Shown in pieces: positions 14,218 to 63,942 of a stretch of DNA of 64,000 bases. This stretch comes from Zygnema circumcarinatum SAG 698-1b. Taxonomy: Eukaryota; Plantae; Zygnematophyceae. Position numbers and translations under genes: made by a program. The notes beneath the pieces are model-generated. The model worked only from the letters and a program-made list of their open reading frames with translations, was not told where the DNA came from and did no database searches. The stretch covers positions 1,572,297-1,636,296 of the forward strand of contig CM074819.1 in assembly GCA_037447605.1 (NCBI GenBank). Direction: 5' to 3'. Numbering within the stretch: position 1 is the first letter of the stretch; each line of letters opens with the position of its first letter.

Positions 14218-14589
14218 ACTGTTGCCGGAGAAAAATATTGGGAAGGAGAGAGTATAAAGAGAAGTGCTACAAAAAAATGCGTTTAAATAGGGGGTGAGAT
14301 AGAGATCGCGATGCTGCAAAGAGCAGTGATTCAGAGGGAGAAATGAGTGTTGCTAATACTACCAAACCTGGGAGAAGACGACGCAGAAAGGGAACGGAAG
14401 CCTCCGGCCGTGGAATTGCGAGGCAAACGCCGCGAATGGCGTTGCTGCGGGAAGGAGGGAAGATTAGGGGAGGGGAGGTGGCGGCTGTGGTGGCGGCGGC
14501 CGTCGCCTCCTGCAAACCCTAAAAAACTATCGGCGGCGACGCGCGTACGGTAACCGCGGTGGGCCACGGCGGACGCTTCAAATCGTGCA

Positions 14590-14608
14590 CGTGGCGATCG
14601 CTGATTGG
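14590..14608. promoter_or_regulatory. ERSE-type composite element (CCAAT-N9-CCACG) in the divergent promoter upstream of GT43; further exact copies at 3455, 12511, 12971, 42378 and 60189
   Basis: CGTGG-CGATCGCTG-ATTGG: exact spacing of the ERSE-I consensus, with a G-box core. Function is untested. Confidence 0.55.
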
Positions 14609-15630
14609 AAAACGGCGTTGTGATGGAACTCGTCGTTTTATCTGCAAAACGGCGTCCTACGTGGCACGTAACGAGCTTGTTACGGTCCACGTAGGATGTC
14701 GTTTTCAGATGGAACGACGAGTTCCATCAGAACGCCGTTGGCCAGCGTGGCAGTCGTACGCTTGCGGATCTTTGATAGCCACGTGGCGGCACGCGAATGG
14801 TCGTAATGGCGTTACACCACCTCCGGAGCAGCATCCTGTGGAACGGTGCTCGTTACCACGTGGCAGCCACGTCGGCGCCACGTTGGCGGAAACGGCCTCA
14901 TGGAACCCATGGGTCGTCGTCCATTACGACGCCACGTCGGAATAACGGGCTGATGGAACCCCACCCTTAAATAGGCCAATGCGCGTTTGAAACGTGGTCT
15001 CATCCTGCACTGACGAGTGGCTGGGCGCTGTCAATTTTTGACATCTACTGTCAAAAAACACAGATCGGAAGACGTACCTTACGTTTGAAACAGTGGTACT
15101 GTACAGTACAATATTCTATACTTCTTGTATCTGCACTATACGGATTTCATAAAACAAAATTCTGTAGCGCAATAATGCCACCTTCGCCCGCGGAGGATAT
15201 GTCCAATCGACCGTACACAACCCACATTCAAATTCAGTACAGTAACGACAAACAAATTCCTTGACCGCATCTTACAGCCCGTACAGAAACGACAGAAGTC
15301 ATTGACTTAGTTTTGTCGGGACTGGACGGAACATCGAGCGGCGCGAAGCGACTTTCCTCTTGCTGCTGCAAACGCTCTGGGTCCGCTTCGAAGCCATGAC
15401 GGCCGGCAGGCTCTGAACCTTGGAGGCTCGCTGGCGCGTCAAGGATTCAGGGTTTTGGAGCCCCTATTGCATTCAAAGCTCTTGGACCTTGAAACCTTCA
15501 AGCTCTATTGAACCTTTCAGGATTTGGACCTTTCAATGTTTTTCCCTGTCAATGCCTTGAAGCTTTAGGGTTCCTGAACTGTGCAGGGAGGCGGGCTCGC
15601 CTCCCTCCCCCCCCCCTCCCCTCCCCCGCC

Positions 15631-26902: not shown

Positions 26903-30605
<3,703 letters not shown>

Positions 30606-31241
30606 TAGGGCACGGAAACGTGGCGGGCGGATAATTTGACACGTGGCATGGGGGGGAACTGGCGGCGAATGGAGGGGCAACACGTGGCGGGGCGAGGAGG
30701 GGAGGGGGGACTGAAGGGGGAGAGGGAGAGGGAGGGAGGGAGGGAGTTGGAGGGGCAAAGGGAGAGGCTTCCCATGTGATACGAAAAATTCGCGCTTTTG
30801 TTTAACGGGGTTAATATGACATGTGTACGGTTAAGCTAGAAATCAAATTTTTGACATGTGACGTCGTTAGGAAAGTTTTATATGCTTTTTGCTGCAAAGA
30901 AATTTAGTTAAAAGGATTGTCAATGACGGAGAATTGCTATGTGCGCGGATATGACAAAATATCGAGGCTCATATTGACAATACGATATTCCGAGTATATC
31001 GGGAAAATATCGTATCGAGTGCTACAGTTTGTGCTGGAACTGGAATGGCTGCACTCAAAATCCCTAAACCTTCCTATACCCAAAAAACGGGCTACTTTTG
31101 TTAATAAAACTCAAAAACATATCGAAATTTTTTCATGAACTTTTCAACCCCATTGACATGTGTGAAGCCGATGACAAAACCCACATTGCCAAATTTGAAA
31201 ATTAGACACAAAATTCACCGAAACCAAGCCCTTCAATTTCA

Positions 31242-38182
<6,941 letters not shown>

Positions 38183-38336
38183 GGCGGGGAGGCGCTGCGC
38201 CGCGACAACGCTCTGTGCGAGTTCACGGAGCGGGTCGTGAAGCGAAAACGGAACTGGAAACTGCTAGTGCATGAAAGGGCCATACTCTCCACTATACCGA
38301 CGCCAATAGGATATGTATCGATACGTAATAATCCTA

Positions 38337-38914
38337 CACAGATCGGACCATTAGACAAACCAGTCGACTGGTTGGCAACCAGTGGTTGCGGACCGAAACA
38401 ACCATTCGACTGGTTTGGAACCAGTGGATGCCACTGGTTCGCAACCAGTCGACTGGTTGCCAACCAGTGGCATCCACTGGTTCCAAACCAGTCGACTGGT
38501 TGCCAACCAGTGGTTGCGGACCGAAACAACCATTCGACTGGTTGCCAACCAGTGGCATCCACTGGTTGGAAACCAGTCGACTGGTTGCGAACCAGTGGCG
38601 CAGGACTGAAACAACCATTCGACTGGTTCGGAACCAGTGATCCAATGGTTGGCAACCATTAAATTGTCGGTGTACGGATCTAAATATTTTTCGTACGATT
38701 TTCCGGCAATTTTAACCAACCATTTGATTTAATGGATATAACCATTCGACTGGTTGCCAACCAGTGCTGCCGGATCGAAACAACCATTCGACTGGTTTCC
38801 AACCAGTGGATGCCACTGGTTCACAACCAGTCGACTGGTTGCCGACCAGTAGACGTCCAACCATTGCCATCCAATGGTTGTCCAATGGTTGCCGATCCAC
38901 TGGTCCGAACTGTG
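38337..38914. mobile_element. Non-autonomous DNA transposon (MITE, hAT-type by 8-bp TSD) filled with palindromic 42/43-bp repeats
   Basis: TIR CACAGATCGGACCA (38337-38350) pairs with TGGTCCGAACTGTG (38901-38914), 13/14 match. Exact TSD TAATCCTA at 38329-38336 and 38915-38922. Confidence 0.88.
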
Positions 38915-39450
38915 TAATCCTATCGGTTCGTAACGGAGTTCCGGAGTTCGGAAAAACCGTTGGACCGAGCGTGATGTGACGGATTCAGTTCCATGCACAG
39001 TTCTGGCGCCGCGTGCAACGCGTTGACAGGTTCCATGTGGGCGCGTTCTGCTTACGTGGTGCTGATGTGGTCCTTCTTCCAATACGACGTCGTCACGTGG
39101 CAGTCAAGAATCCGTCTCGATGCTCCCGCCACGGCGGCTCGCAGTCAACGACCCGCCGTGATCGCAGCCAATTTTGGCCGCCACGTGGCGAGTTATAATT
39201 GATCCGCGTCATTGCAAAATAGGTTTTCCACACTTTTAGCGTGAACCGCACGATCCGACACGTGACGCAGTTTGTGTCCGCAAGATGGAGGGCCGGCGTC
39301 GCATGCAGCGGCATGCAAAGCTTGGCTTCGTTCGAGGCCGCTCGCTTCTCGCAATAGTGGAAGGACGCGCATGCGAGGGGAATATGAAACCGTTATAATT
39401 TTTCAGTGATGGAGATGAATATAAAATACCAGGCATTTTTAGAGGGAATC

Positions 39451-39495
<45 letters not shown>

Positions 39496-39508: not shown

Positions 39509-40359
39509 ATGGATTCGCATCAACTTGGCAGAATTGAAGCGTACGAAAAATCTGTACGCCTCTTGGAAGAGGCAGCGGAGGGTGGGAGAATGGAGCAAAG
39601 CTGGGAGGTGGAGGCCAACGCATGGCTTGGCCTTGCAGATTTGGCGATAACCCAAGTTAAGCACTTGCATAAAGTGCGCATGAATCTTCAAACAGGGGGA
39701 AACGTGAGGCCAAATTTCACATGCTCCATTCTTTTGTGGTTTATGGACACCTTTCTTACGTATGTTCAGTAAAAAAATTCAATACTGTCACGAGCAATAA
39801 ATTTGTTTCGAATGTTAATTTCGAAAACTTGTCAGCCACTGATTCCCTTTTCAGAGTTGAAATAGCAAAACAGTACACACTCGAATTTCAGATTTCTTTC
39901 ATCAATTCATTGGTCAGCCCCCCCTCCCCCCCCAAAAACTGAAATCCTGGTCCCGCCCTTGTGTAGTTTGTTGCTCGGGAAGAACAACTCCGCCTTCTCG
40001 TCGATGCCAAACAACATTGCCAACATGTTGCACACCATGAAGCGCCATGTGTTCGTACCAAGACTTCGTTGGGCCGCCGCGCTCAAAGGCTGTTAGACGA
40101 TGACCTCCCTGCGCTTGAAGCGATGGTTCGCGAAGCGCCATTTTGGCAGACTGTGACTGATGAAGAGAGACGCCAAATCAAAGAGGCTATGGCGCTTCCC
40201 GCAAAGCACTGGTACAGGTGTCCCAACGGGCACACGTACGCCATAGGCGAGTGCGGAGGGGCCAATGAGGAGTCGAATTGTTCAGAGTGCGGGGCGGTTG
40301 TAGGAGGGAGAGCTTATGGTCTCGCGGCTGGAAATGAAAGAGACAATAGCATGGGATGA
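39509..40359 (+). CDS. Stand-alone RZ-type zinc-finger protein (195 aa, 2 exons), partial paralog of the ZNFX1 C-terminus
   Basis: Exon 1 39509-39703, GT-AG intron 39704-39966, exon 2 39967-40359. HWYRCPNGHTYAIGECGGANEESNCSECGAVVGG is an RZ finger. The phase-0 intron is at the same position as the last ZNFX1 intron. Confidence 0.85.
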
Positions 40360-40933: not shown

Positions 40934-42066
40934 TAGGGATGGCTTAATTACGACTATATAATCTATATTATATTATATAACTGTGACGACTAAATAACGG
41001 CTGTTATATAATACTTTACAACGCCTTTACAACATGTACGGTCGTACGATTGTACGGTATTATGCGGTGAAGACAGATGTAGCGTAACGGAGCTGCGTTT
41101 GACGGATCCGCGCCCGTTCAGTTGTACTTGACATGTTCATATTCAGTGTCACGGACCGGCCTGATCCAGGAATTGCCGACGGAAAATGCGAGACGGCGGC
41201 GCCATTTGTTGGCGGCCCACGGGACAGCACACCATCCAGCTAGGCGCACTCGGAAGCGCCGCNNNNNNNNNNCGGACAGATTCTGTACCTCCCCTCTGGC
41301 CTTCCTGTTCCTTTCCCCAACGAACGCATGGAGATTCTGGATGTCGCCCACGATTCCCAGCCCGGCGGATTCCACCTTGGCCAGAAGAAGATGGTCGCTC
41401 TGCTGCAGGAGCGTTATTATTGGCCCGGCCTCCATGGCGCGGTGAGCCGCTACATCGACACCTGCACCCGCTGCCAACGCGGCAAGCGCTCTGCTCCCCC
41501 CGACCGCCAACCCCTGGAGATGGGTGAGATCCCAATACGCGGCGTCGCCGAAGACTGGAACATCGACACCTTTTCTATTCCCCAGCTCGGCACCCCCTCT
41601 GGCTACATTCGAGTCTTCCTAGCCGTGGACAGATACACCAAGTGGGTGGANNNNNNNNNNGATCCCTACGTCTTCCGCTGCGCGTACCTCTGAATCTCCC
41701 GGATCCTGGCTCTATGCTGCAGGCAGACCCACAGGACCAACACAACCCTTCGTCAGTTTCAGCACGGACGCGCGAGTGGCCGTACAGCACCTGCAACTAG
41801 CTCAGCAGTCTCCTCTTAACCCCACTTATCTTGTGCTACACAGAGTGAACCAGACGGACGCATTTCGCAACGCCAACGCCAAAACGACCTAATTTTGGTA
41901 TGGTACGGTCTGGTATGGTACGACCGTACGAGTACGGTCGTTAATTGTTCAAAACAAGTGGGTATAATATATGTAATAAAGTGTTTTACTTTGTACTATA
42001 TTACTACTTTTAAACCCGTTGTAAAGTATATAATATAGTCGGACTTTATAACGCGGGCCATCCCTA
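40934..42066. mobile_element. Non-autonomous hAT (Ac/Ds-like) element
   Basis: TIR TAGGGATGGC (40934-40943) pairs with GCCATCCCTA (42057-42066), like the Ac/Ds TAGGGATG terminus. Exact 8-bp TSD GTCGGGAC at 40926-40933 and 42067-42074. Inverted subterminal blocks TACTTTACAACG and GTACGGTCGTAC are present. Confidence 0.9.
41273..41650 (+). mobile_element. Ty3/Gypsy-type integrase fragment (H2C2 zinc-binding domain plus start of the rve core)
   Basis: ILDVAHDSQPGGFHLGQKKMVALLQERYYWPGLHGAVSRYIDTCTRCQRGK...WNIDTF...FLAVDRYTKW. Bounded by N gaps on both sides. Confidence 0.88.
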
Positions 42067-43591
42067 GTCGGGACAAGCCGGCGGTCGTTGACCGTCGCTG
42101 TTTGTTGACTTATACGGCGGAATGCTGTCGGTGGATTTTGGATTCTAGCGACAGGAAGTGGCAGCCAATGAGCGGGCGTGACGTAGGGGTCCGTACTCTG
42201 ACGTTACTGGCTAATCATGGCTAACCACATGGTAACCAAAAAATGACTTTATGGAGGGCAGTTGACCGCTCATTGCTCGCCTTCGAAAAGTTGACTCGAG
42301 GGGCATTCGGAGAAAGTTGAGAATGACGTGGATCAATGGGTGACTGCCACATCGGACAGCTGTGAGATTTGTGATTACGTGGCGGTCGGTTATTGGTTTA
42401 CGCATTATTCGGTACCGCACCGTCGACTGAATTTTGACCGATGACGATAGGTCGAAATTATTTTTTTCAATGGCGGCCAGACATCGGTCAGCCTAAATGT
42501 GACACGTTTCTGTCCCTCATTCGTCGACCGACAGCCGAAAGGTCAGGAAAAAAGCAGAATTTTTTTCGATTGGTCGAAATAAATTGTCGTATGTGCCGTT
42601 CGCACGGTCGGGCACCCGTTCCGTAACTCTCAAAAATATTTTCTCTGCTGCTCAGATAAAATTTAATTCTCAATGTAAATATTTCTGACATTCTGATCCC
42701 TTTCCTTCCATCCTTTTTCACTTCCCACTCTGGGAAAATTTGTTTTATCCTGCCCGTAGACGCGACCCCTTTCGACTGAAAATTTATACAAGAAGTTTTT
42801 TCCTTAAAAAAAACGTTTTTCTGCCCGTCGCTGGGCCTCCCCCCCTCCCAGAGCGGCGAGCTCGGGACTTTTTTATCTAATTTTGTGGCAGAGGGGGAGG
42901 TGGGAGGGGAGGTCTCGGAACCCTAATTTTTCTTTTCTTTAAAGGGAAAATTTACCTACTATTTAGGATTTAGGGTTTTTGGAGCTGCAAAGGGGAGAGA
43001 GCCTATTGGGGTTACTCCTGCCTTCCCCCACCCCCCCCTCTCCCTTATTTATTTATTTATTCTTTAAGGGAGGAGGAGAGAGCAGATAAGTGAACTGACT
43101 GACTTAACTGACTTGAGAAGGAGGAGGAAATTTCAGCCGATGGGGCGTCTCTAATTGGTTGAAAAAGGGTAGAAATCTCTTTTTTTTGGCTAATTCAGCT
43201 AACCCTAATCTTGTGATATCCTCCTCTGAAAGGGAGGGAGATGGTGAAGTGAAGCTACTGGTTAGTTAGTTAGTTAAATGATCTTGACCATCAGCAGCCA
43301 TGAAAGATTCAGACCCATTTTTGTCTTTTTGACATCACGTAGAAGGCCATGCATTGTAGCTGCTCGAAAACCGGTTAACCAACGGTCTGTCTAACCGACT
43401 AAGTGGCTGACTGTCCAAACTAGCCAACTCGGAGTTCCTTGGGTAAAAAATAGGTCAATTTTTTTAACATACTCTTGGTCTCAGGACGCTCCTTATTACT
43501 GTTTTTTCTTTTTTTTTTTTTAAGTTCTTAATACTCGTGGTCCTCAGGGAGGTGCTCATTACTGTAGTTTTTTTTTTTTTTTAAGTTGTTA

Positions 43592-45536
43592 ATGGCGTTT
43601 CCAGCCTCTCGGCGGACGGTGAGAAACTCTCTCTTTTCCCGCCAGACGCAGTCCGATGTCGGCCATGGGTCCCCGAAGGAGAGTCTCAAGGAGGGCAGCT
43701 CTTCAGAAACGCAAAAAGGCCCACAATGGGCCTCGCATAATTCCGTAATTTTTGGATCTTCAAAGCAAAAACCGGCGACATTTGACGGATTCCTCCAAAG
43801 GGTGTGCGGAAATGATGCTTCGGAAACGACCCACATCGGAAACCCACTTGAGGAAAATGTTGATTCGAGTGGGTCTGCATTGCATGGCGCGAGGAGCGAG
43901 AATAGGGCGGGCTTGGCGAGGCCAGGTGGCATGCTGGGAATGGTCCAATCGGGGAAAGGAGGGTCCCCTAAGCTCACTGATGGCTCAGTTGAGTACGCAA
44001 TTGAGCCCGACAGCATTTCCGGATTTGATATTAGGAAAGACTCCATAATCTTGAATCGGCCGTCGAATCTCAGTGATAGTGCTTTGCATGAGAGAGGGAG
44101 TCCGCAAAAACCCATGTCGAAAAGTGAACCATTTTCCGGAGATGTTGCATCTCCGACTGGTTCAGGGGGAGCTCTTAGAGCAGAGCAGCAAAGCAAGCAT
44201 CCCTCTAATAGACAGTTAGATTTAAGTACTGGAGACAGATTGGGGTCTTGCAGGAGGTTTCAAAAGGATGGTGAGTGGGAGGCGAGAGGGGGGTTGGTGG
44301 CAGTTCTATGGGACCCCGAGCCAAGAGAAGGGAGAGAGGTGTTGTTAGAGAGAGAGAGAGAGGCTCTGCTTGTGGCAGAGAAAGAGGCGGAGCGTCGGAA
44401 GGAGAGAGGAGAATTAATAATGAGTTCACTCGAGTCGCATCCTCTGGCTACACGGTTAACCGACTTACAAATTACGCGGCTGGTTGATGAGCTTCGGTCG
44501 GAGGACAGTTCGAAAAGGAAGGATGCAGTTCATCAACTGAGAATGCTGGCGAAATATTCCGAGGAAAACCGAGGTTTAATCGCAGATGTAGGTGGAATTG
44601 AGCCTTTGGGAAAGCTGCTAAGTGATAGCGATGATAGTATTGTATCTGAAGTTGTGACTGCACTGCTGAACCTTTCAATTCACAGTGGGAACAAAAAGAT
44701 CATGCATGGAGTGATTGAGCCATTAGTCAAAATGTTGGAGCACAAATCATGGGATACAAATGAGAATGCCGCTGCTACTTTGTTTAGTCTTTCAGTTCTC
44801 GACGAGTATAAGATCAAAATTGGAGCTTCAGGGGCTATTCCCTTCCTTACAGACATCCTCCGGAAGGGTTCAGAGCAAGGACAGAGGGATGCATGCAAAG
44901 CCCTTTTTAACCTCTCCATTCTCAGTACAAACAAATGGAGACTTGTTGAAGCAGGAGCTGTAGAAGTCCTAGTCAACCTTCTCCAAGAGCCTGCATCGGG
45001 AATGGCGGAGAAAGCAGTTTCAGTTTTGGCTAACTTGGCCACCATTCCGGAAGGGAGAGAAGCTTTAGCAGATGCATTCGACGGAATTTCTGGTTTAGTT
45101 GAAGTGGTCGAGTCGGGACTCCCCAGAGGGAAGGAGAATGCAGCGGCTGCTTTGTGGCATTTGGCCAAAAACGATCCCACACATCGCAAGCTGATTCTGC
45201 AGGAAGTCGTTATTCCGCCGCTTGTTGCTCTCGCGCAGACCGGAACAAGCAGAGCAAAGGAGAAGGTGGGTCTATTCTTTCTTTAATTTGAGCTTTTTCC
45301 CAATTTTCCGTACCTTCATTTGGGGTTCTCAAGTTGTTTTTTCTTAGTTTTATCTCCTAGAGGGTCTTGGGTGTGCGTTGGGAATGCATTTTGTCTGTTT
45401 TTGTCGCACATCATGAGATGTGATATCACATCATCTTCATTCACACATCGTGACGTCATCGTCTGACGTCATGTGATCTCTGTGGTTTGTGCAGGCCAAC
45501 CTACTGTTGACCGACTTCCGAGACAAGTGCGCGTAA
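43592..45536 (+). CDS. Armadillo-repeat protein, PUB4-like ARM domain; no U-box seen
   Basis: ITRLVDEL...LRMLAKYSEENR...GGIEPL...VTALLNLSI...ENAAATLFSLS...IGASGAIPFL...DACKALFNLS...EAGAV...EKAVSVLANLA...GKENAAAALW...IPPLVAL...RAKEK. Intron about 45266-45494, last exon ANLLLTDFRDKCA*. Confidence 0.9.
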
Positions 45537-48401: not shown

Positions 48402-51400
48402 CTACAACCCTTCCATGCTGTCATCTCTCTCATTGCCCGCCGCAAGAAGGTGTCCTCCCCCTCCCACAACCGCCCCACACTCAGGACACGTCGACTGTTC
48501 CATAGCCCCCCCACAGTCGCCTATGGCATATGTGTGCCCATTGGGACACCTGTACCAATGCCCCGCTCCAAAGTTCATTGCCTCTCTTATTTTCCGCTTC
48601 TCGTCGATCGTTACAGGCAACCAAGTTGGGGCCCCACGAACCCTAATTTCAAGGGCAGGGAGATCGTCTTGTAGCTGTTTCCGAGCGAAGTCGCCCAATG
48701 TATCCTTAGTACGAACAGACTGCATTTCATGGTGGGCTACATATCGGAAATGTTGTCTGGCTTCAGTAAGAAGGCGGAGTTGCTCCTCTTGGACGGCAAT
48801 CTATACAGAAAAAGCAAACACACAGCACTGAATAATCAATGCCTTGAATTAATTATACTAAGGAGTTTCAACCTGAAAGCGAGCTGAATTCACAGAACAG
48901 TCAAGAGTATGTGAAAAAAATTCTCACATTCTTATCCATTTGAGGATATATACGCACTCCCTGTAAACCCTTCACTCGGCTTATTACCAACCCTGCAAGG
49001 CCCAATCTTGCAGTAGCCTCCACAAGCCAGCTTTGCTGCTTGTTCGCCAACTCCATCCCCTTATTGAAGCAGTCCATCCCATCTTCATACACTGCATTTA
49101 TACGCAGTAGATGACGCTCCAAAATATCCCCAAGCTCTCCCTCTTGCATGTTCTTAACTAAATTAGACAGTGCAAGAAACATAGATTTGAACTTCACAAG
49201 CATAGAAAGCTCCCAAGCTTTGCCAAAGAGGATGAATGCTTCAGAAGTAGTTCGAACATCAGGATGAGGAATAAAGCCTGCATGTTGCTGCAAATGTCGC
49301 AAATTGAAGTCCGCTTCTTCCAAATCTTCAAAACCAAGAGACCTGCTTATCGCGACAAGCGTCGCTTCATAAGCCTGTTTTGTGGGATGGTGTTCACAGG
49401 ACTTGACAAAATTCCGAATTTTCTGAACGTTCGCATTTACTTTCTCCGTAAATCCGGCCCTCATTGGCGTCCCTTCTTGAAGTTCAGCGAGCTCATTTCG
49501 CAATCCTGCTAAAGTTTCTTCATAGTTCCCAAGCTCACTTCTCGCAGCCTGAATAAACTTCCTCTCCGATTGGTCCAGCATCGCCTTGTTAATCATCCTC
49601 CCATATCGTTTCACCTTTGTGATGGGCGCCCTGCATTCAGGGCAACCTTTTAACTCAACTAAGTCACTGCCAAGCAGCAACGGAGAGTCCCAATCTTCCT
49701 CCTCCTCTTCAACTTCCTCCGGCAGGGATACATTGCTTTCTCTGCCCTCTTCCCTCCCTCGCTCTCCTTCGCTAGCATTCGAAATCTCGCCTTCTTCCAT
49801 TATCTCTCCTTCCTCCTCACTGCCACTCTCCACTCCTCCAACCCCACCATCCTTTGATCTGCTTAATGAAACTCCTCCACTCTCACTCTCTTCCTCATCA
49901 CTCACTTGCCTCCTCTTCCAGACCCTCCTTAGCTTCCGACTGTAGTACTTACGGAGCCCAACGTGCATGTCCATGTTGGAAACTATGTAAGCATGTCCAC
50001 AGCCAAGCACTACTAAAGGATCCTCCTCAAGATCCACTTCCTCCAAAGTACTCATCATATATAGATCTACTACAAGCCCCTTGTTCTTAGGAGTCCCACA
50101 TGCTTGACAGTAAGCCATTGGGGGACAATCCTCTCCACAAATAGAAGGGCATTGGTGCCCACAACTTAGAAGCCTCGTACACCTCTTATCGCAGGGTAAA
50201 CGGGTACATGGAGCTCCACAAGGGAGCCGACATTTTCCGCGATGTGAACAAAACCAAGTGCATGGCTCCGCGCAAACTGCACACGGTTTGTGGCATTTTT
50301 TTCCGCAGGTGCTATGGGAGCATGCAACTGGGCAATTCCTTTGGCATGGAGGGCATGGCTTGCCCTCATGGCATGTTGAGACGCATACATGCCCACATAG
50401 GAGGTTTCTCTCACATTGTTGTCTGCAAGGGGGGTGAATTTTTCGGGAGTCTGTTGTCGAATGTGGAGAATTCAAAGTAAAGCATTCGCCACATTTTGCT
50501 TTGCATAAATGACCACACTCCGCAATTGGGTGCCCGCAAACTGCCCGACATTTTTTGGGCTCGTACTGAACAATCGCAGCTTCTGAGCAGTCAACAGGTT
50601 GCTTATGGTTGCATATACCCATTGTTATCTCCACCTTTTTCCTGCAAGAAAATTTACACACAAAGCTTTGTTACCACAGATTGCCCACGGACTTTGCTTT
50701 TCAAAAAGAAATCAAAACTAGAGCTATATTCTTGCTGAGATGGCTATGTTAAAGGAAACCACAGTGGGTTCATTACCGGCATGGAATACGGTCCAGATGG
50801 TTTGTCTCGCTGCATCTGACACTTGACGCAATATGGCCGCACGGCAGTTTTACGGAACTGATGGCAACGCTGCATGGGCCACATGGATCGCCACATGCAA
50901 GAGGGCATGGATGGCTCCATGCGCACTCAGTTAGAGGGCGAAGCCGTTCACATTGTTTGTTGCAGCGAACTGTCACATGGTCTCGATCGTCAGGATGACA
51001 TCTGCATGGGCCAGAACGATCGTCGGTAATGCCCATTAACGTGAGAGTGAGATTAAGAGTGATTACCAGGAATATAAGTTAAGGAATGTCTGTCCAATAC
51101 TTTAGGCTGCCATGCACAAACACTTGAAGAGTAATACGTGTTTAGAAGTGAAGGAATGGTAAGAAAGGTGTACATTTATATGTAGGATATTATAGTACAA
51201 TGTAGGATATTTTAAAGGCAGAGTGAGAGGAATTCCGCACACCTTCGAGGACATGCATGCCCACATGGCATCCGAAAGTTGCATGACGAAGCGCAGCCTC
51301 CATCCCCAGCAAGCTCCTCAAAGTCGCTCGCTTTAGCGATTCGGGTTTCGTTCTCCGGATGCGCCACACATTTCAGAAGTAGTGTGGGGCCCACACAATC

Positions 51401-59447: not shown

Positions 59448-60954
59448 ATCAGAGAACCTTCCTCAATATTATCCTATCCTCGCTCTCCTCCTTCCCTCTC
59501 TCCCTCCTCGTTCCTCCACACTCCTCCTCCTTCCTCCTCTCTCCCTCTCTCTCGCCCACCCTCGCCCTCTCTCCAATCAGAATGAGACAAGCGCACTCCC
59601 AACTCCTGCTTTCAAGACGTGCTGGCTCTACTCTCCTCACTCAGGCCTCTCCCTTCATCCCCTATCCTAGCAGCAATGCTCAGCTCCTCCCTCTCCTTCC
59701 ATCCCCTATCCTAGCAGCAATGCTCAGCTCTCCTCTCTCTCCCTCCCCCTCTCTCGCCCCTGCAGGAAGACGCAGCCATGCAAGATGTCAAAACTCCTGC
59801 AGCCCATGCTCCATTTGGACCCCATATCAGCCGACCACCATCTAATGGCGGTCTGCCACGTGTACAATATGTAGACGTGGCGCGTCCACATTGGATCTTG
59901 CTCCCAAGGTTGCAAACTCAAATCTCTCGACTTTGCCTACGTGGCATTCCAGCACGTTTCTAACACATGCCGACACGTGCTATACGCAATATCTAGACTG
60001 CCATGTCATCAAATTTTTTCAAAGTGAGTGACACGTCAACATAAAGGCAGCCAATCAGCGCGCGATTTACAGTCACGTGGACGCCACGACGATTCTTGGC
60101 CAGAGCCGAACAGGATGCGGACGTGCTGGGTCTCTATTGAAGGTCGAGCGCAGCCAATGACGGCTTGCAACTTTGGCAGATTTGCCTACGTGGCATTCCG
60201 TGATTGGCCGAATCTGCCTCGAGTCCCGCCGTCCCCCCTTGGCCCAATACGCCTTTTGGAGGCCCTTTTTCTTCTGCAGGTTTGCAGGCGCCAAGCGTAC
60301 GGACACCCTCTGATTGGTCCAATTTCTCGGTTTGGTCAAACTGAGGCCGAAAAGTTTGCAACCGCCGAAATGCGGTTTTTCAATTTAGGGCAGCATCAGT
60401 TTGACACCAAAATAAGTACAGTACTTTGGTACAAAATCAATCCTCATGCAGAGTACTCCTTCTATGTTCAGTCGATCGCGGTCGTGCGAGTCGCTTGAAT
60501 ATAGGGAACTAAGCGATTCCATGGTTCCCTTAACTTTATGAAGGGTCCTGTCTGGAAGTGGGTCGCTTTCGCCACGTACAATTTGAAACTTTATCGAATG
60601 TAGCATTACGATATTCTTTTCTTGAACTCGGACTCTTGGGAGAAACCAAATGTGACATTATCAGGTGTGTTATTTACTTTATCGAGGGTGTAATGTTAGA
60701 ATATACCAAGCAGGTCCTTTACTTTCTGGAGGGCCGGTTTTCTCGTGCTATGAATTGACTCAAATCACGGATTTCCGCTCTAAAATGAAAACCCAGAAGC
60801 TAAAAGTTAGAAGAAACCAAACATAAGGAAAAAAAAAACGATGAAAAAAGGTAAAAAAAACCCTCCGGAATTTGACTTTTTATTGCAATTTTCCACTTAT
60901 CCCACCACCTCACAAAATGGGCAGCCCCTAAAGAAGGCAAAGGAAAGAGCCCTT

Positions 60955-63942
60955 TCATGTCCTCTGCCGGGCCCTCTCTATGAGCGGCCGGAGGTGCTTC
61001 TTCTCCGCCAAAATTTTGAGGAAGTTGAAGAGGAAGGGGATGTAGTTGTGCTTCCGCCGAATGTTCTCCGTCCGCCACTTCTTGTACTTCTCCTCCTCCG
61101 CCGCAATGTGCTCTGGAAAATCGCAGAAAGACCCCATCTCTACTTGAGTTCACCTATGGCCGATCGATCTATGGTCATGCTTTACAGTTATGTTGCTTTC
61201 GGATCTTCCAGAACTTAACAGATCTCTAAGAATTAACGAAAGTGAGCCTTGCAAGTCTGTTTAAGGTAAGGCTAAAGTTAAAATTAGTTTAGGTTAGTTA
61301 GATTAGTTAAGTCTAAACTAAACTAGACTAAGCTTAGGTTAGTTTGTAGTACCGCCCTAAAGTCCCTATCTTGTTCATTCTTCCAGAACTCCACCACCCT
61401 CATCCCTACTCCCTCTCTCCCACCTCTCTCCCACCTCTCTCCCACCTCTCTCCCACCTCTCTCCCACCTCTCTCCCACCTCTCTCCCACCTCTCTCCCAC
61501 CTCGCTCACACCTCTCTCCCACCTCTCGCCCACCTCTCGCCCACCTTTCTCCCACCTCTCTCCCACCTCTCTCCCACCTCTCTCCCACCTCTCTCCCACC
61601 TCTCTCCCACCTCCCTCCCACCTCTCTCCCACTTCCCATGCCAACAAACTTCCCACCTGTCAGAGTGGCAATCTGAGCCTCCACATGAGCAATGTCCTCC
61701 CGAATAGCCGCCCCGGCTGCTCCCGTTCCCGAGTCCACATCCATGGCTGCCTCCCCTTGGTTCAACCCTCCTGATCCAATCACCTTCTCCAACCGACTTT
61801 GCAGCTGCGCTCTAAGACCCTCAAACTTCGCCAACTGCTCCTCCATAACCTCCTTTCTGTTGCGGACAATAGCCATAAGGTTGAACCTAATCTCGCTCTG
61901 CGAATACTTTTCAATCCTTTCTTGAATGACTGGCTGAACCTTTTTCAGCCAATCAAGGGGGTCCTTTCCACAGTCTCCCAAACTGATGGGTCCCTCCTTT
62001 AGCCCATCAAGCTCGTAAAGGACCCCATTGACAGGCAAGTAGCTGATGAAGTGGTAGACATCATCATCCTTCTCTCCCTGCTTTGTTTCCTCCGCTACAA
62101 TTGCTTCCGGTCGAGCAAAACTGTTATGAGCTGTTCGAATTGCTTCACTGTTATTGATCGCAAGCCCCCTCAGCTCTGGAGAAAAATCTTTGGTGAACTC
62201 TCGCAGAGCATTCAGCTCCGGACCGATTTCAATTTGCTGACAATTCATTAGGATGGAGAGAATGGCTTGCGTAGCGCATGCATTGTTTATTACCTGAACA
62301 GAAAAAGCAGGACAGCAGATACTTTCTTAATTATGTGCAATCACTTCCATGGAGTTCGCATGCGAAACTTAATCCGTTTTTTCTACGGATATCTACTTCT
62401 GCAGTTACTGTGATAGAACTGCAGTTGAGCTGATGGTTAAACTGCATACAGACCTGACTTGCAAAGAAAAGGCCACTGCTGCTGAAGTCCTTAAGAACAG
62501 GACGAGTGTCGGTTTCACCGGGACGCCACTTGAATAAGAATACAAGGCCATAGACAGGGCTGCACACAAACAGGTGAAACAGACTTGGCATAAGTGCAAA
62601 GAGGAAAACTAAGAAGCTCCAAAGGCTGCATCATTTAGCTCTCCTCTTTCTCTGAGCCCTTCTGCGTGTCTTTTTCAGCATCTGCTGTTAATCTGGCCGA
62701 ATTCGTGTTTATGATGATAGTTGTTACCAATTGGAAAGCTACTCCATATGCAAACTATCACTAAACATGAGGTTACCTGTTTTGAGGATTACCTGAGCTG
62801 CTCCAACATATCCAGGTCTAAACTGTAGAGCTCCTCCACCTGTAATCTCACAATACAGGTAACCTCATGCATTGGACTGCTGATTCTCACAGAACAGAAG
62901 AGCAAGAAGCTTCACATGTTTGGCAAGCACAGGCAAGATGTTGTTTCCTGTGCAACAAAAGTTGGCGTTTTTTTAGTGAATGACATTCAGCATTCAGAAA
63001 GCTGCACGATGAATATTTATGAGGGTCTCCTCTACAATGGATTTTCCATACAAGAATTGGAGAGACAACGGGGTACCTGAACTCCTTTCACTTGCATTTG
63101 CTGAATCAATTCCGTAAAGACACCTGCAAATTGGGTTAAAGAGAATTCCATCAATTCTTTAACTAAACACAAGAATCCCAATATTGAAGGGCCAAACAAA
63201 AATATTGGCATGTGTGCATGCGCTAGTTGGGCCATAGATGTGATTATTTAGTGAAAGAGGAAAGAAATTCCTCTTAGATTTCCCCAGTATAAAAAATAGG
63301 GGCATTCTTCTACACCAGGCTCAATTGCATTGAAGAAGTAGACTCCAAAAAACAAGGATTGCTTCAGAATGCCTAAACCTAAACTGCTTTTAAAATTGGT
63401 CTTCAGAAATAAAGAATAACCCGTTCAATCCAAATGTATGCGCCCTAAAATTGACAAACAGCCCTCTGTTTGATATTGGAACATTTCAGAGGCTGTCATT
63501 GAAAACCATTACAGGAAAAGCAGTTCTTTAAACTCCAAAGGAATGAAAGAAGGCGATGAACTCTTTCTGTCAAATTTTCCAACGAATTTGAACCATTGAT
63601 TTGTATTTTCGATAATAATATGCGTAATATCTTAATTATTTTTGAAATTGCAGGTAAAGGGAGCAAATTATCGCACATACTACACATCCGAATGTTGGAA
63701 TAAAAGAAGCGGGAGAGGGAATAGAGGAGAGGGAGTGAGATTTTGTGGAACGGGAGAAAGCGAAAGCAAGAGAGGAAGGAGGTCTAAACGAGAGGAAAAA
63801 TGAGAAAGTGCAGCGAGGGGTAGAGAGAGAGAGAGCGCGAGAGAGAGAGTAAGAGAGAAAGAGAGAAAGAGAAAAAAAATAGACAGAGAGAGGGAGAGAG
63901 AGAGAGCTTACCAGGGTCCGACTCGATAGTACACCAAGACAT
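60955..63942 (-). CDS. UCHL5: Ubiquitin C-terminal hydrolase L5/UCH37 (plant UCH2-like), 6 exons
   Basis: [11 protein letters not shown] / VFTELI / VEELYSLD / [11 protein letters not shown] / [14 protein letters not shown] (catalytic Cys), YHFISY (His), YELDGL (Asp), and the ULD tail [15 protein letters not shown]. Confidence 0.96.
61413..61632. repeat. 11-bp minisatellite (CTCTCTCCCAC) x20 in the last UCH37 intron
   Basis: 220 bp = 20 units with few substitutions, starting just after the GT donor on the - strand. Confidence 0.93.

What the first reader, a model, noticed from the sequence alone, without database searches (positions are those of the whole stretch)
39509..40359. Intact stand-alone RZ-finger mini-paralog of ZNFX1 with His-to-Tyr at the catalytic partner position: candidate decoy or regulator
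Seen: a 195-aa two-exon gene is an inverted copy of only the last two exons of the ZNFX1 gene about 8 kb away. The phase-0 intron is in the same place (QSWEVEANAWLGLA...GGN| vs QSWLVEATARLGLA...DKN|). The last exon is about 60-65% identical by manual alignment with no stops or frameshifts, and the gene has its own G-box-rich upstream region. It keeps CPNGH, the GEC cysteine and CxxC, but the His 21 residues after that Cys (GGGGH in ZNFX1, 48450-52) is Tyr (GGRAY, 40315-17). Known: in RNF213 the RZ finger's GEC Cys is the transthiolation nucleophile and the His at +21 is its catalytic partner; RZ fingers mediate non-canonical ubiquitylation in innate immunity. Inference: this is a helicase-less, probably catalytically altered RZ protein acting as a decoy, dominant-negative or E2/ubiquitin sink paired with a ZNFX1 RNA sensor.
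Basis: partly seen in the sequence, partly recalled or inferred. Interest (0 to 1): 0.88.

Follow-up and report, generated by a model that had tools for sequence, protein, structure and literature searches.

The report
Conserved stand-alone RZ-finger gene beside ZNFX1
A streptophyte alga has kept, next to its ZNFX1 helicase-ubiquitin-ligase gene, an old partial copy encoding only the ubiquitin-handling tail (RZ finger); the copy looks selected, not decaying, but its His-to-Tyr change also occurs in full-length enzymes, so it does not show a decoy.

Summary
A 195-codon, two-exon open frame (39509-39703, 39967-40359, +) is an inverted copy of the last exon plus the final 65 codons of the large penultimate exon of the ZNFX1-type gene 8 kb away. 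The phase-0 intron sits at the same place. Exon 2 scores 77.9 bits on Pfam ZnF_RZ-type. It keeps the zinc ligands, the nucleophile Cys and the ubiquitin-helix Ile. The general-base His is Tyr (40315-40317).

It behaves like a selected gene:
- Similarity stops at the coding edges; introns and flanks are unalignable.
- There are no indels or stops despite dS of about 0.7-1.1.
- dN/dS is 0.22 in exon 2 and 0.15 in the RZ finger.
- Amino-acid change is about as fast as in the parent.
- The copy is sister to the neighbouring ZNFX1, so the duplication is lineage-specific.

The decoy reading is not supported. In 248 distinct RZ cores the position is His 237, Tyr 11 and nothing else. Tyr arose at least seven times, always with the Cys retained. 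It also occurs in full-length helicase-RZ proteins.

No transcript or ortholog could be found, because this organism appears absent from the collections searched. Best reading: a maintained, helicase-less solo RZ protein that probably works with ZNFX1 in trans; whether it is active is unknown.

The parts
39094..39264 (.). Cluster of three CACGTG G-boxes, 250-415 bp upstream of the ATG
   Evidence: sites at 39094, 39182 and 39259. The window holds 32 sites against 4.6 expected, in clusters ahead of genes, including 59857-60079 ahead of ZNFX1.
39420..39427 (+). TATA-like element (TATAAAAT), about 82 nt before the ATG
   Evidence: Read directly. No transcript data, so its function is inferred.
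39447..39495 (+). (CT)n tract, putative 5' leader; parent homology ends around here
   Evidence: One search finds no similarity to the parent exon upstream of the ATG.
39509..39703 (+). Exon 1, 65 codons, homologous to the last 65 codons of the parent's penultimate exon
   Evidence: 38% identity, dN/dS 0.72. tblastn gives 44% over 61 residues, E 1.3e-08. The ATG aligns with a TTG Leu codon of the parent.
39704..39966 (+). Phase-0 GT-AG intron (263 nt) at the same codon position as the parent's 127-nt intron
   Evidence: No sequence similarity between the two introns.
39967..40359 (+). Exon 2, 130 codons plus TGA: two long helices, the ubiquitin-binding helix and the RZ finger
   Evidence: 64% identity, dN/dS 0.22; AlphaFold2 mean pLDDT 88.1; helices 2-22, 35-56, 65-75; four strands.
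40159..40191 (+). Helix matching the ubiquitin-binding helix of RZ domains; Ile 25 residues before the Cys is kept (RQIKEAM)
   Evidence: Helix 65-75. Family column -25 is Ile in 95 of 147. Human ZNFX1 I1835A abolishes activity of the RZ fragment (bioRxiv 10.1101/2025.10.14.682297).
40195..40341 (+). RZ-type zinc finger (CPNGH...GEC...CSEC...GGRAY)
   Evidence: Pfam PF20173, 77.9 bits, residues 77-125 of exon 2. Matches the RZ region of RNF213 chains in the PDB, E 8.4e-09.
40252..40254 (+). Cys codon at the transthiolation nucleophile position (RNF213 C4516, ZNFX1 C1860)
   Evidence: This Cys is invariant in 248 RZ cores.
40315..40317 (+). Tyr codon (TAT) where the family has the general-base His (RNF213 H4537, ZNFX1 H1881)
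   Evidence: Family counts at this position: His 237, Tyr 11.
48402..48800 (-). Parent: last exon of the ZNFX1-type gene, with an RZ finger carrying His (CAC 48452-48450)
48928..49122 (-). Parent: last 65 codons of the penultimate exon, homologous to exon 1 of the copy

Best explanation
An old partial inverted duplication of the 3' end of the neighbouring ZNFX1-type helicase/E3 gene has been kept as a separate protein-coding gene.

The product is 195 residues long. It has no helicase, no NFX1-type fingers and no Miz/Z-RING E2-binding domain. It consists of three helices from the parent's C-terminal scaffold, the ubiquitin-binding helix and the RZ finger.

Shown here:
- The anatomy and the RZ membership.
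- Retention of the zinc ligands, the nucleophile Cys and the helix Ile.
- Purifying selection on the coding sequence.
- The His-to-Tyr change arose on this copy's branch.

Inferred:
- It is transcribed from its own promoter (TATA-like element, CT-rich leader, G-box cluster).
- The protein binds ubiquitin and can be charged on its Cys. The most plausible donor is E2~Ub held by the Miz/Z-RING of ZNFX1 acting in trans, since it lacks an E2-binding domain of its own.
- It would then either pass ubiquitin on with altered chemistry or hold it. That makes it an accessory or modulator of the ZNFX1 ubiquitin relay.

Tyr is a recurrent natural alternative in RZ fingers of full-length enzymes, so I do not take it as proof of inactivity.
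For: Anatomy and family:
- Gene structure.
- Pfam RZ hit of 77.9 bits.
- Match to the RNF213 RZ region, E 8.4e-09.
- Confident model with the expected helix plus four strands.

Selection:
- Similarity is confined to the coding parts; introns and both flanks are blank.
- There are no indels in 195 codons.
- NG86 dN/dS is 0.33/0.97 overall, 0.24/1.12 for exon 2 and 0.18/1.21 for the RZ finger.
- Under neutral substitution at 0.3-0.5 changes per site on this branch, the chance of keeping 195 codons free of stops is 0.008-0.001, before counting indels.
- Changes unique to the copy against changes unique to the parent are 16/14, 20/7, 17/13 and 10/13 with four outgroups.
- Tree branch lengths are 0.25 for the copy and 0.17 for the parent.

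Origin: the copy is sister to the window's ZNFX1 (SH-aLRT 98), and the outgroups carry His.

Start of the gene: an in-frame stop lies upstream of the ATG. A TATA-like element, a CT tract and three G-boxes are present.

Trans action is plausible from the literature. An isolated ZNFX1 RZ fragment auto-ubiquitylates in vitro, and Miz-to-RZ transfer between protomers is proposed (bioRxiv 10.1101/2025.10.14.682297).
Against: - There is no evidence of transcription or splicing. All look-ups came back blank, apparently because this organism is not in the collections.
- No ortholog of the solo gene was found in another species, so selection rests on one paralog pair with dS near saturation.
- Exon 1 is weakly constrained (dN/dS 0.72).
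- One outgroup shows faster change in the copy (20 against 7, p 0.012).
- The RZ finger carries three rare residues: Lys at -16, where Gly holds 243 of 248; Ser in CSEC, unseen in the 147 cores tabulated; and Tyr at +21.
- H1881N abolishes RZ-dependent activity in human ZNFX1 (bioRxiv 10.1101/2025.09.05.674436), so Tyr could still disable discharge.
- A short unrecognised 5' exon cannot be excluded.
Confidence: 0.62

Rival explanations
1. Decoy, dominant-negative or ubiquitin sink. The solo RZ protein is catalytically disabled by the Tyr. It competes with the RZ finger of ZNFX1 for Miz-bound E2~Ub or for ubiquitin, and so damps ZNFX1 signalling.
For: - It lacks every other ZNFX1 domain but keeps the ubiquitin helix and the Cys.
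- His is needed for RZ-dependent activity in human ZNFX1, as H1881N shows (bioRxiv 10.1101/2025.09.05.674436).
- The scaffold helices shared with the parent are conserved.
- It sits 8 kb from ZNFX1, and both genes have G-box clusters upstream.
Against: - Tyr is the only alternative to His in 248 RZ cores and arose at least 7 times, always with the Cys kept.
- Tyr occurs in full-length helicase-RZ proteins and in a Miz-plus-RZ gene fragment from a metagenome. That pattern fits a working variant better than a dead site.
- G-box clusters are common ahead of genes in this window, so shared regulation is not shown.
- No interaction or activity data exist.
Confidence: 0.2
2. Non-functional relic: an untranscribed or meaningless partial duplicate whose open frame has survived by chance.
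For: - No transcript or annotated protein was found.
- Partial duplicates usually die.
- Exon 1 evolves fast (dN/dS 0.72).
- Three rare residues sit in the RZ finger.
- A transposon fragment lies nearby.
Against: - The neutral chance of no stop is 0.001-0.008 at the observed divergence.
- There are no indels, although introns and flanks are unalignable.
- dN/dS is 0.15-0.22 in the RZ finger and exon 2.
- The rate of change matches the parent's with three of four outgroups.
- The splice sites are intact.
- The blank look-ups are uninformative, because the parent ZNFX1 was not found in the collections either.
Confidence: 0.1
3. Part of a larger or different transcription unit. The two exons would be the 3' end of a longer gene with further 5' exons, or the CT tract would lie in a 5' intron, so the product would not be the 195-residue protein.
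For: - The pyrimidine-rich CT tract is followed by a possible acceptor (ttggcag at 39525-39531).
- In the divergent DEAH helicase gene a similar (CT)n tract lies in the first intron.
- No transcript data fix the 5' end.
Against: - Only about 1.3 kb separates the ATG from the start of the divergent DEAH helicase gene.
- An in-frame stop lies 66 nt upstream.
- Homology to the parent begins at the ATG.
- The TATA-like element is correctly placed.
- No Pfam-bearing ORF lies upstream on the + strand.
Confidence: 0.08

Closest known systems
C-terminal RZ finger of ZNFX1 (human C1860/H1881), the transthiolating half of its two-part E3 module
   Same: Direct paralog of the RZ-bearing tail of the neighbouring ZNFX1-type gene. 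It has the same intron position, zinc ligands (C-x3-H...C-x2-C), nucleophile Cys and ubiquitin-helix Ile, and it hits Pfam PF20173.
   Different: It has no SF1 helicase, ZNFX1 domain, NFX1-type fingers or Miz/Z-RING E2-binding domain. The general-base His is Tyr. It is a separate gene of 195 codons.
RZ finger of RNF213 (human C4516/H4537)
   Same: Sequence match to the RZ region of solved RNF213 chains, E 8.4e-09, with the same motif spacing.
   Different: In RNF213 the finger sits inside a giant AAA/E3 protein whose own C-terminal domain binds the E2. Here it stands almost alone, with Tyr in place of the His.
Tyr-type RZ fingers in other ZNFX1-like proteins (Cetraspora pellucida CAG8469958.1, Cyphellophora europaea XP_008716597.1, Aureobasidium vineae CAD0085630.1, ENA contig L001)
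   Same: Tyr 21 residues after a retained nucleophile Cys in an otherwise canonical RZ finger.
   Different: The Cetraspora and Cyphellophora proteins are full length with a helicase. The Aureobasidium protein and L001 hold part or all of the Miz domain plus the RZ finger. Tyr arose independently in each lineage.
Short database proteins annotated 'RZ-type domain-containing' (about 100-440 residues)
   Same: A C-terminal RZ finger without a helicase.
   Different: Both short hits followed to their contigs (P0003, P0004) proved to be last exons of longer genes, and most of the rest lie on very short contigs. The fungal models of 300-440 residues begin inside the Miz domain. None is shown to be a true solo gene, and none is close to this one (best 49% identity).

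Membership tests
RZ-type zinc finger (Pfam PF20173) | Profile match above the curated cut-off | tested here: met
   77.9 bits against a cut-off of 27, E 4.3e-22, residues 77-125 of exon 2.
RZ-type zinc finger (Pfam PF20173) | Four zinc ligands, C-x3-H ... C-x2-C (RNF213 C4505, H4509, C4525, C4528) | tested here: met
   CPNGH and CSEC are present at the family spacing. The ligand assignment comes from PMC11549300.
RZ-type zinc finger (Pfam PF20173) | Nucleophile Cys 7 residues after the ligand His (RNF213 C4516, ZNFX1 C1860) | tested here: met
   GEC, codon 40252-40254. The Cys is invariant in 248 cores.
RZ-type zinc finger (Pfam PF20173) | General-base His 21 residues after the Cys (RNF213 H4537, ZNFX1 H1881) | tested here: not met
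   Tyr (TAT 40315-40317). Eleven of 248 family cores also carry Tyr and none carries any other residue.
RZ-type zinc finger (Pfam PF20173) | Preceding ubiquitin-binding helix with a conserved Ile (ZNFX1 I1835, 25 residues before the Cys) | tested here: met
   The Ile in RQIKEAM lies in predicted helix 65-75. Ubiquitin binding itself was not tested.
RZ-type zinc finger (Pfam PF20173) | Beta-sandwich fold around the zinc | tested here: inconclusive
   The AlphaFold2 model has mean pLDDT 88.1, with a helix and four strands. Foldseek against the PDB gave no match at E<=0.001; the RZ finger is only partly resolved in the RNF213 structure (PMC11549300).
RZ-type zinc finger (Pfam PF20173) | Transthiolating E3 activity | not testable with these tools
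   Needs E2~Ub discharge or activity-probe assays.
ZNFX1 / NFX1-type zinc-finger helicase | SF1 helicase core (AAA_11/AAA_12) and ZNFX1 domain | tested here: not met
   Absent from the 195-residue product. Present in the parent gene's exons.
ZNFX1 / NFX1-type zinc-finger helicase | Miz/Z-RING E2-binding domain ahead of the RZ finger | tested here: not met
   The parent motif GCPECRAPITKVKRYGR lies about 190 codons upstream of the duplicated part. The copy starts after it.
Decaying partial-duplicate pseudogene | Stops, frameshifts, dN/dS near 1, and faster change than the parent | tested here: not met
   No stops or indels; dN/dS 0.33 overall and 0.22 in exon 2; ORF retention unlikely under neutrality; rates similar to the parent.

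The most novel reading that the evidence does not exclude
The alga runs a split ubiquitin relay. A separately encoded RZ module docks on ZNFX1 and takes ubiquitin from its Miz-bound E2 in trans, tuning or redirecting ubiquitylation. More broadly, Tyr-type RZ fingers would be a distinct, functional catalytic class, with a different leaving chemistry or substrate nucleophile, that has arisen repeatedly across eukaryotes.
Probability: 0.2. Interest if true: 0.75.

Novelty: new variant of a known kind. Interest (0 to 1): 0.5.

Why it matters
RZ fingers are known as the transthiolating active sites of two large innate-immune E3 ligases, RNF213 and ZNFX1. In both they are embedded in giant proteins.

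A selected gene encoding little more than the ubiquitin helix and the RZ finger, next to its parent ZNFX1, would be a natural minimal RZ module. It is small enough for biochemistry and structure work. It would also test directly the proposal that Miz-to-RZ ubiquitin transfer can run in trans.

Separately, the proposed general-base position alternates only between His and Tyr, repeatedly, and with the nucleophile always kept. That is a concrete lead on the RZ mechanism which swap mutants could test. It also extends ZNFX1-type biology into streptophyte algae.

Tried and rejected
- Short relatives by word-indexed search with exon 2: none. The profile search later showed many short RZ hits, so that blank was a limit of the tool.
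- Metagenome scans by back-translated peptides and by an exact 24-mer of exon 2: nothing.
- Exact-protein look-ups of the exon 1 read-through ORF, an exon 2 ORF and the parent's last-exon ORF: none on record.
- Search with the parent's 586-residue exon: best hits were only 38-67% identical over partial coverage. The organism therefore seems absent from the collections, and the lack of transcripts says nothing either way.
- I did not type in the spliced 195-residue protein, so no exact look-up of the full product was made.
- The short hits P0003 and P0004 looked like solo RZ orthologs. They proved to be last exons of longer ZNFX1-like genes.
- P0140 shares Lys at -16 and Tyr at +21, but it lies on a 697-bp contig, too short to interpret.
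- Foldseek against the PDB gave only weak zinc-ribbon matches.
- Similarity in the 3' flanks, suggested by shared GGTCAYG-like motifs, was not borne out by blastn.
- The bacterial promoter and terminator scan is irrelevant to a eukaryote.

Full report
**What is there**

On the + strand an ATG at 39509 opens 65 codons that end at a GT donor (39704). A 263-nt intron ends in AG at 39966. A further 130 codons then run to a TGA at 40357-40359. The frame is closed 66 nt upstream of the ATG by a TAG.

On the minus strand, 8 kb away, lies a multi-exon ZNFX1-type gene. Its exons hit AAA_11, AAA_12 and the ZNFX1 domain. It ends with a penultimate exon of more than 586 codons (last base 48928), a 127-nt intron and a last exon at 48800-48402.

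The small gene is an inverted copy of the last exon plus only the final 65 codons of the penultimate exon. The phase-0 intron sits at the same aligned codon in both.

- Identity is 55% at the amino-acid level (exon 1 38%, exon 2 64%, RZ part 73%) and 67% at the nucleotide level, with no internal gap.
- The repeat finder independently reports gapless inverted arms of 406 nt at 71%.
- tblastn finds no third copy in the window.
- Exon 2 hits Pfam ZnF_RZ-type at 77.9 bits and the parent at 85.0, against a cut-off of 27.
- Exon 2 also matches the RZ region of solved RNF213 chains.

**Is it a gene or a relic?**

Similarity between the copies is confined to the coding parts. The introns, the 5' flank and the 3' flank give nothing by MAFFT or blastn. 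A long time has therefore passed, which fits dS of 0.7-1.1. Several results point to selection over that time:

- There is no indel and no stop in 195 codons.
- dN/dS is 0.33/0.97 overall, 0.24/1.12 in exon 2 and 0.18/1.21 in the RZ part.
- Exon 1 is looser, at 0.52/0.72.
- In a neutral substitution simulation with 0.3-0.5 changes per site on this branch, only 0.8% to 0.1% of runs stay free of stops, before counting indels.
- With four outgroups, changes unique to the copy against changes unique to the parent are 16/14, 20/7, 17/13 and 10/13.
- On the maximum-likelihood tree the two end branches are 0.25 and 0.17.

So the copy has evolved at about the parent's pace, not at a neutral pace. The two sequences are sisters (SH-aLRT 98), nested among green-algal sequences whose nearest named members are Closterium at 49% identity. 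The duplication is therefore lineage-specific.

**The start of the gene**

- The ATG aligns with a TTG Leu codon of the parent.
- Upstream lie a (CT)n tract (39447-39495), a TATA-like TATAAAAT (39420) and three G-boxes (39094-39264).
- G-boxes are seven-fold enriched across the window and cluster ahead of genes, including ZNFX1. The cluster therefore suggests a promoter, not specific co-regulation.
- Further upstream are a palindromic MITE-like array and a divergent DEAH helicase gene. That leaves little room for more exons, although a short 5' exon cannot be excluded.

**What the protein keeps and loses**

It lacks the helicase, the NFX1-type fingers and the Miz/Z-RING domain that binds the E2. 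The parent's GCPECRAPITKVKRYGR motif lies about 190 codons upstream of the copied part.

It keeps two long helices, the short helix before the finger, and the finger itself. AlphaFold2 with a 20-sequence alignment gives mean pLDDT 88.1, with helices 2-22, 35-56 and 65-75 and four strands.

Three papers assign the residues:
- Zinc ligands RNF213 C4505, H4509, C4525 and C4528, nucleophile C4516 and general base H4537 (PMC11549300).
- ZNFX1 C1860 and H1881, and a ubiquitin-binding helix in which I1835A kills the isolated RZ fragment (bioRxiv 10.1101/2025.10.14.682297).
- H1881N abolishes the RZ-dependent activity (bioRxiv 10.1101/2025.09.05.674436).

The copy has all four ligands, the Cys (40252-40254) and the Ile 25 residues before it. 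It has Tyr at the His position.

**The Tyr is not special to this copy**

An exhaustive profile-free search with exon 2 found 1661 relatives. A profile search added more.

- In 248 distinct RZ cores, matched with a pattern that left both catalytic positions free, the residue 21 after the Cys is His 237 times, Tyr 11 times and nothing else. The Cys is present in all 248.
- On the tree the Tyr state needs 9 changes, at least 7 of them forced by well-supported branches.
- Tyr occurs in full-length proteins with a helicase and an RZ finger: Cetraspora (1975 residues), Cyphellophora (1636) and an 1860-residue ENA protein.
- It also occurs in the last exon of a gene fragment holding the Miz and RZ domains on an ENA metagenome contig, whose RZ region groups with the green-algal sequences.

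If loss of the His were mere decay, Arg (the other one-transition neighbour of His) and other residues should appear, and the Cys should sometimes be lost. Neither is seen. Tyr therefore looks like a tolerated or selected alternative.

The copy's finger is somewhat derived. It has Lys at -16, where Gly holds 243 of 248. It has Ser in CSEC, unseen in the 147 cores tabulated. It has Tyr at +21. Only 12% of cores deviate as much at conserved columns.

**How it most likely works**

- Shown: the anatomy, the family membership, the selection, and the direction of the His-to-Tyr change.
- Inferred: it is expressed, binds ubiquitin through the helix, and is charged on its Cys. Having no E2-binding domain, its most plausible donor is E2~Ub held by the Miz/Z-RING of ZNFX1. 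One of the preprints proposes Miz-to-RZ transfer between protomers and shows that an isolated RZ fragment is active in vitro.
- Open: whether it then passes ubiquitin on (accessory module) or holds it (sink or decoy).

I put about 0.6 on 'maintained solo RZ gene working with the ZNFX1 relay'. Within that broad reading the specific decoy version stands at about 0.2. A relic gets about 0.1 and a different gene structure about 0.08.

**Limits**

- No transcript, peptide or ortholog was found.
- Every look-up for this organism was blank, including for the parent gene, so these blanks carry no weight.
- Selection rests on a single paralog pair with dS near saturation.
- The short RZ proteins in the databases are mostly fragments or last exons. 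They neither establish nor exclude prior examples of true solo RZ genes.

**Verdict**

This is a new variant of a known kind (an RZ finger freed from its helicase/E3 host), of moderate interest. The His/Tyr alternation at the proposed general-base position is a second, testable lead.

Noticed in passing
Proteins P0004, P0025, P0026, P0032, P0053, P0072, P0092, P0105, P0118, P0140, P0154: Across eukaryotic RZ fingers the proposed general-base position is only ever His (237) or Tyr (11) in 248 distinct cores. Tyr arose at least 7 times, and the nucleophile Cys is always kept, including in full-length helicase-RZ proteins.
   Followed up: partly
window 43586-45286 (+): A 566-codon ORF with Armadillo repeats of the plant U-box (PUB) ARM type lies between the solo RZ gene and ZNFX1 (Pfam Arm 1.3e-33, ARM_PUB 1.2e-21). 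No U-box was seen in this ORF.
   Followed up: partly
window 41328-41693 (+): Retrotransposon integrase fragment (Integrase_H2C2, 3.2e-16) next to a short run of N, between the two RZ copies.
   Followed up: partly
whole window; clusters at 710-904, 14588-14862, 30544-30686, 39094-39264, 59857-60079: CACGTG G-boxes occur 32 times against 4.6 expected from shuffles. They cluster in intergenic, promoter-like stretches, including ahead of ZNFX1.
   Followed up: partly
window 36500-38183 (-): By eye, a DEAH-box helicase gene diverges from the solo RZ gene. Its ATG is at 38183-38181, and its first intron begins GTGAGT and holds a long (CT)n tract on its sense strand. Not checked against a domain library.
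   Followed up: no
window 61406-62248 (-): By eye, the ORF resembles the C-terminal half of a UCH37/UCHL5-type deubiquitinase, fused in the ORF listing to a [11 protein letters not shown]-type tandem repeat. Not checked.
   Followed up: no
protein P0006 (272 residues): A database protein with about five tandem, partly degenerate RZ half-motifs (CPNGHLY...IGDCGMA...), unlike the usual single finger.
   Followed up: no
window 38337-38914: Array of near-perfect palindromes (units such as GTCGACTGGTTGCCAACCAGTGG) between the two divergent genes, seen in the inverted-repeat list.
   Followed up: no
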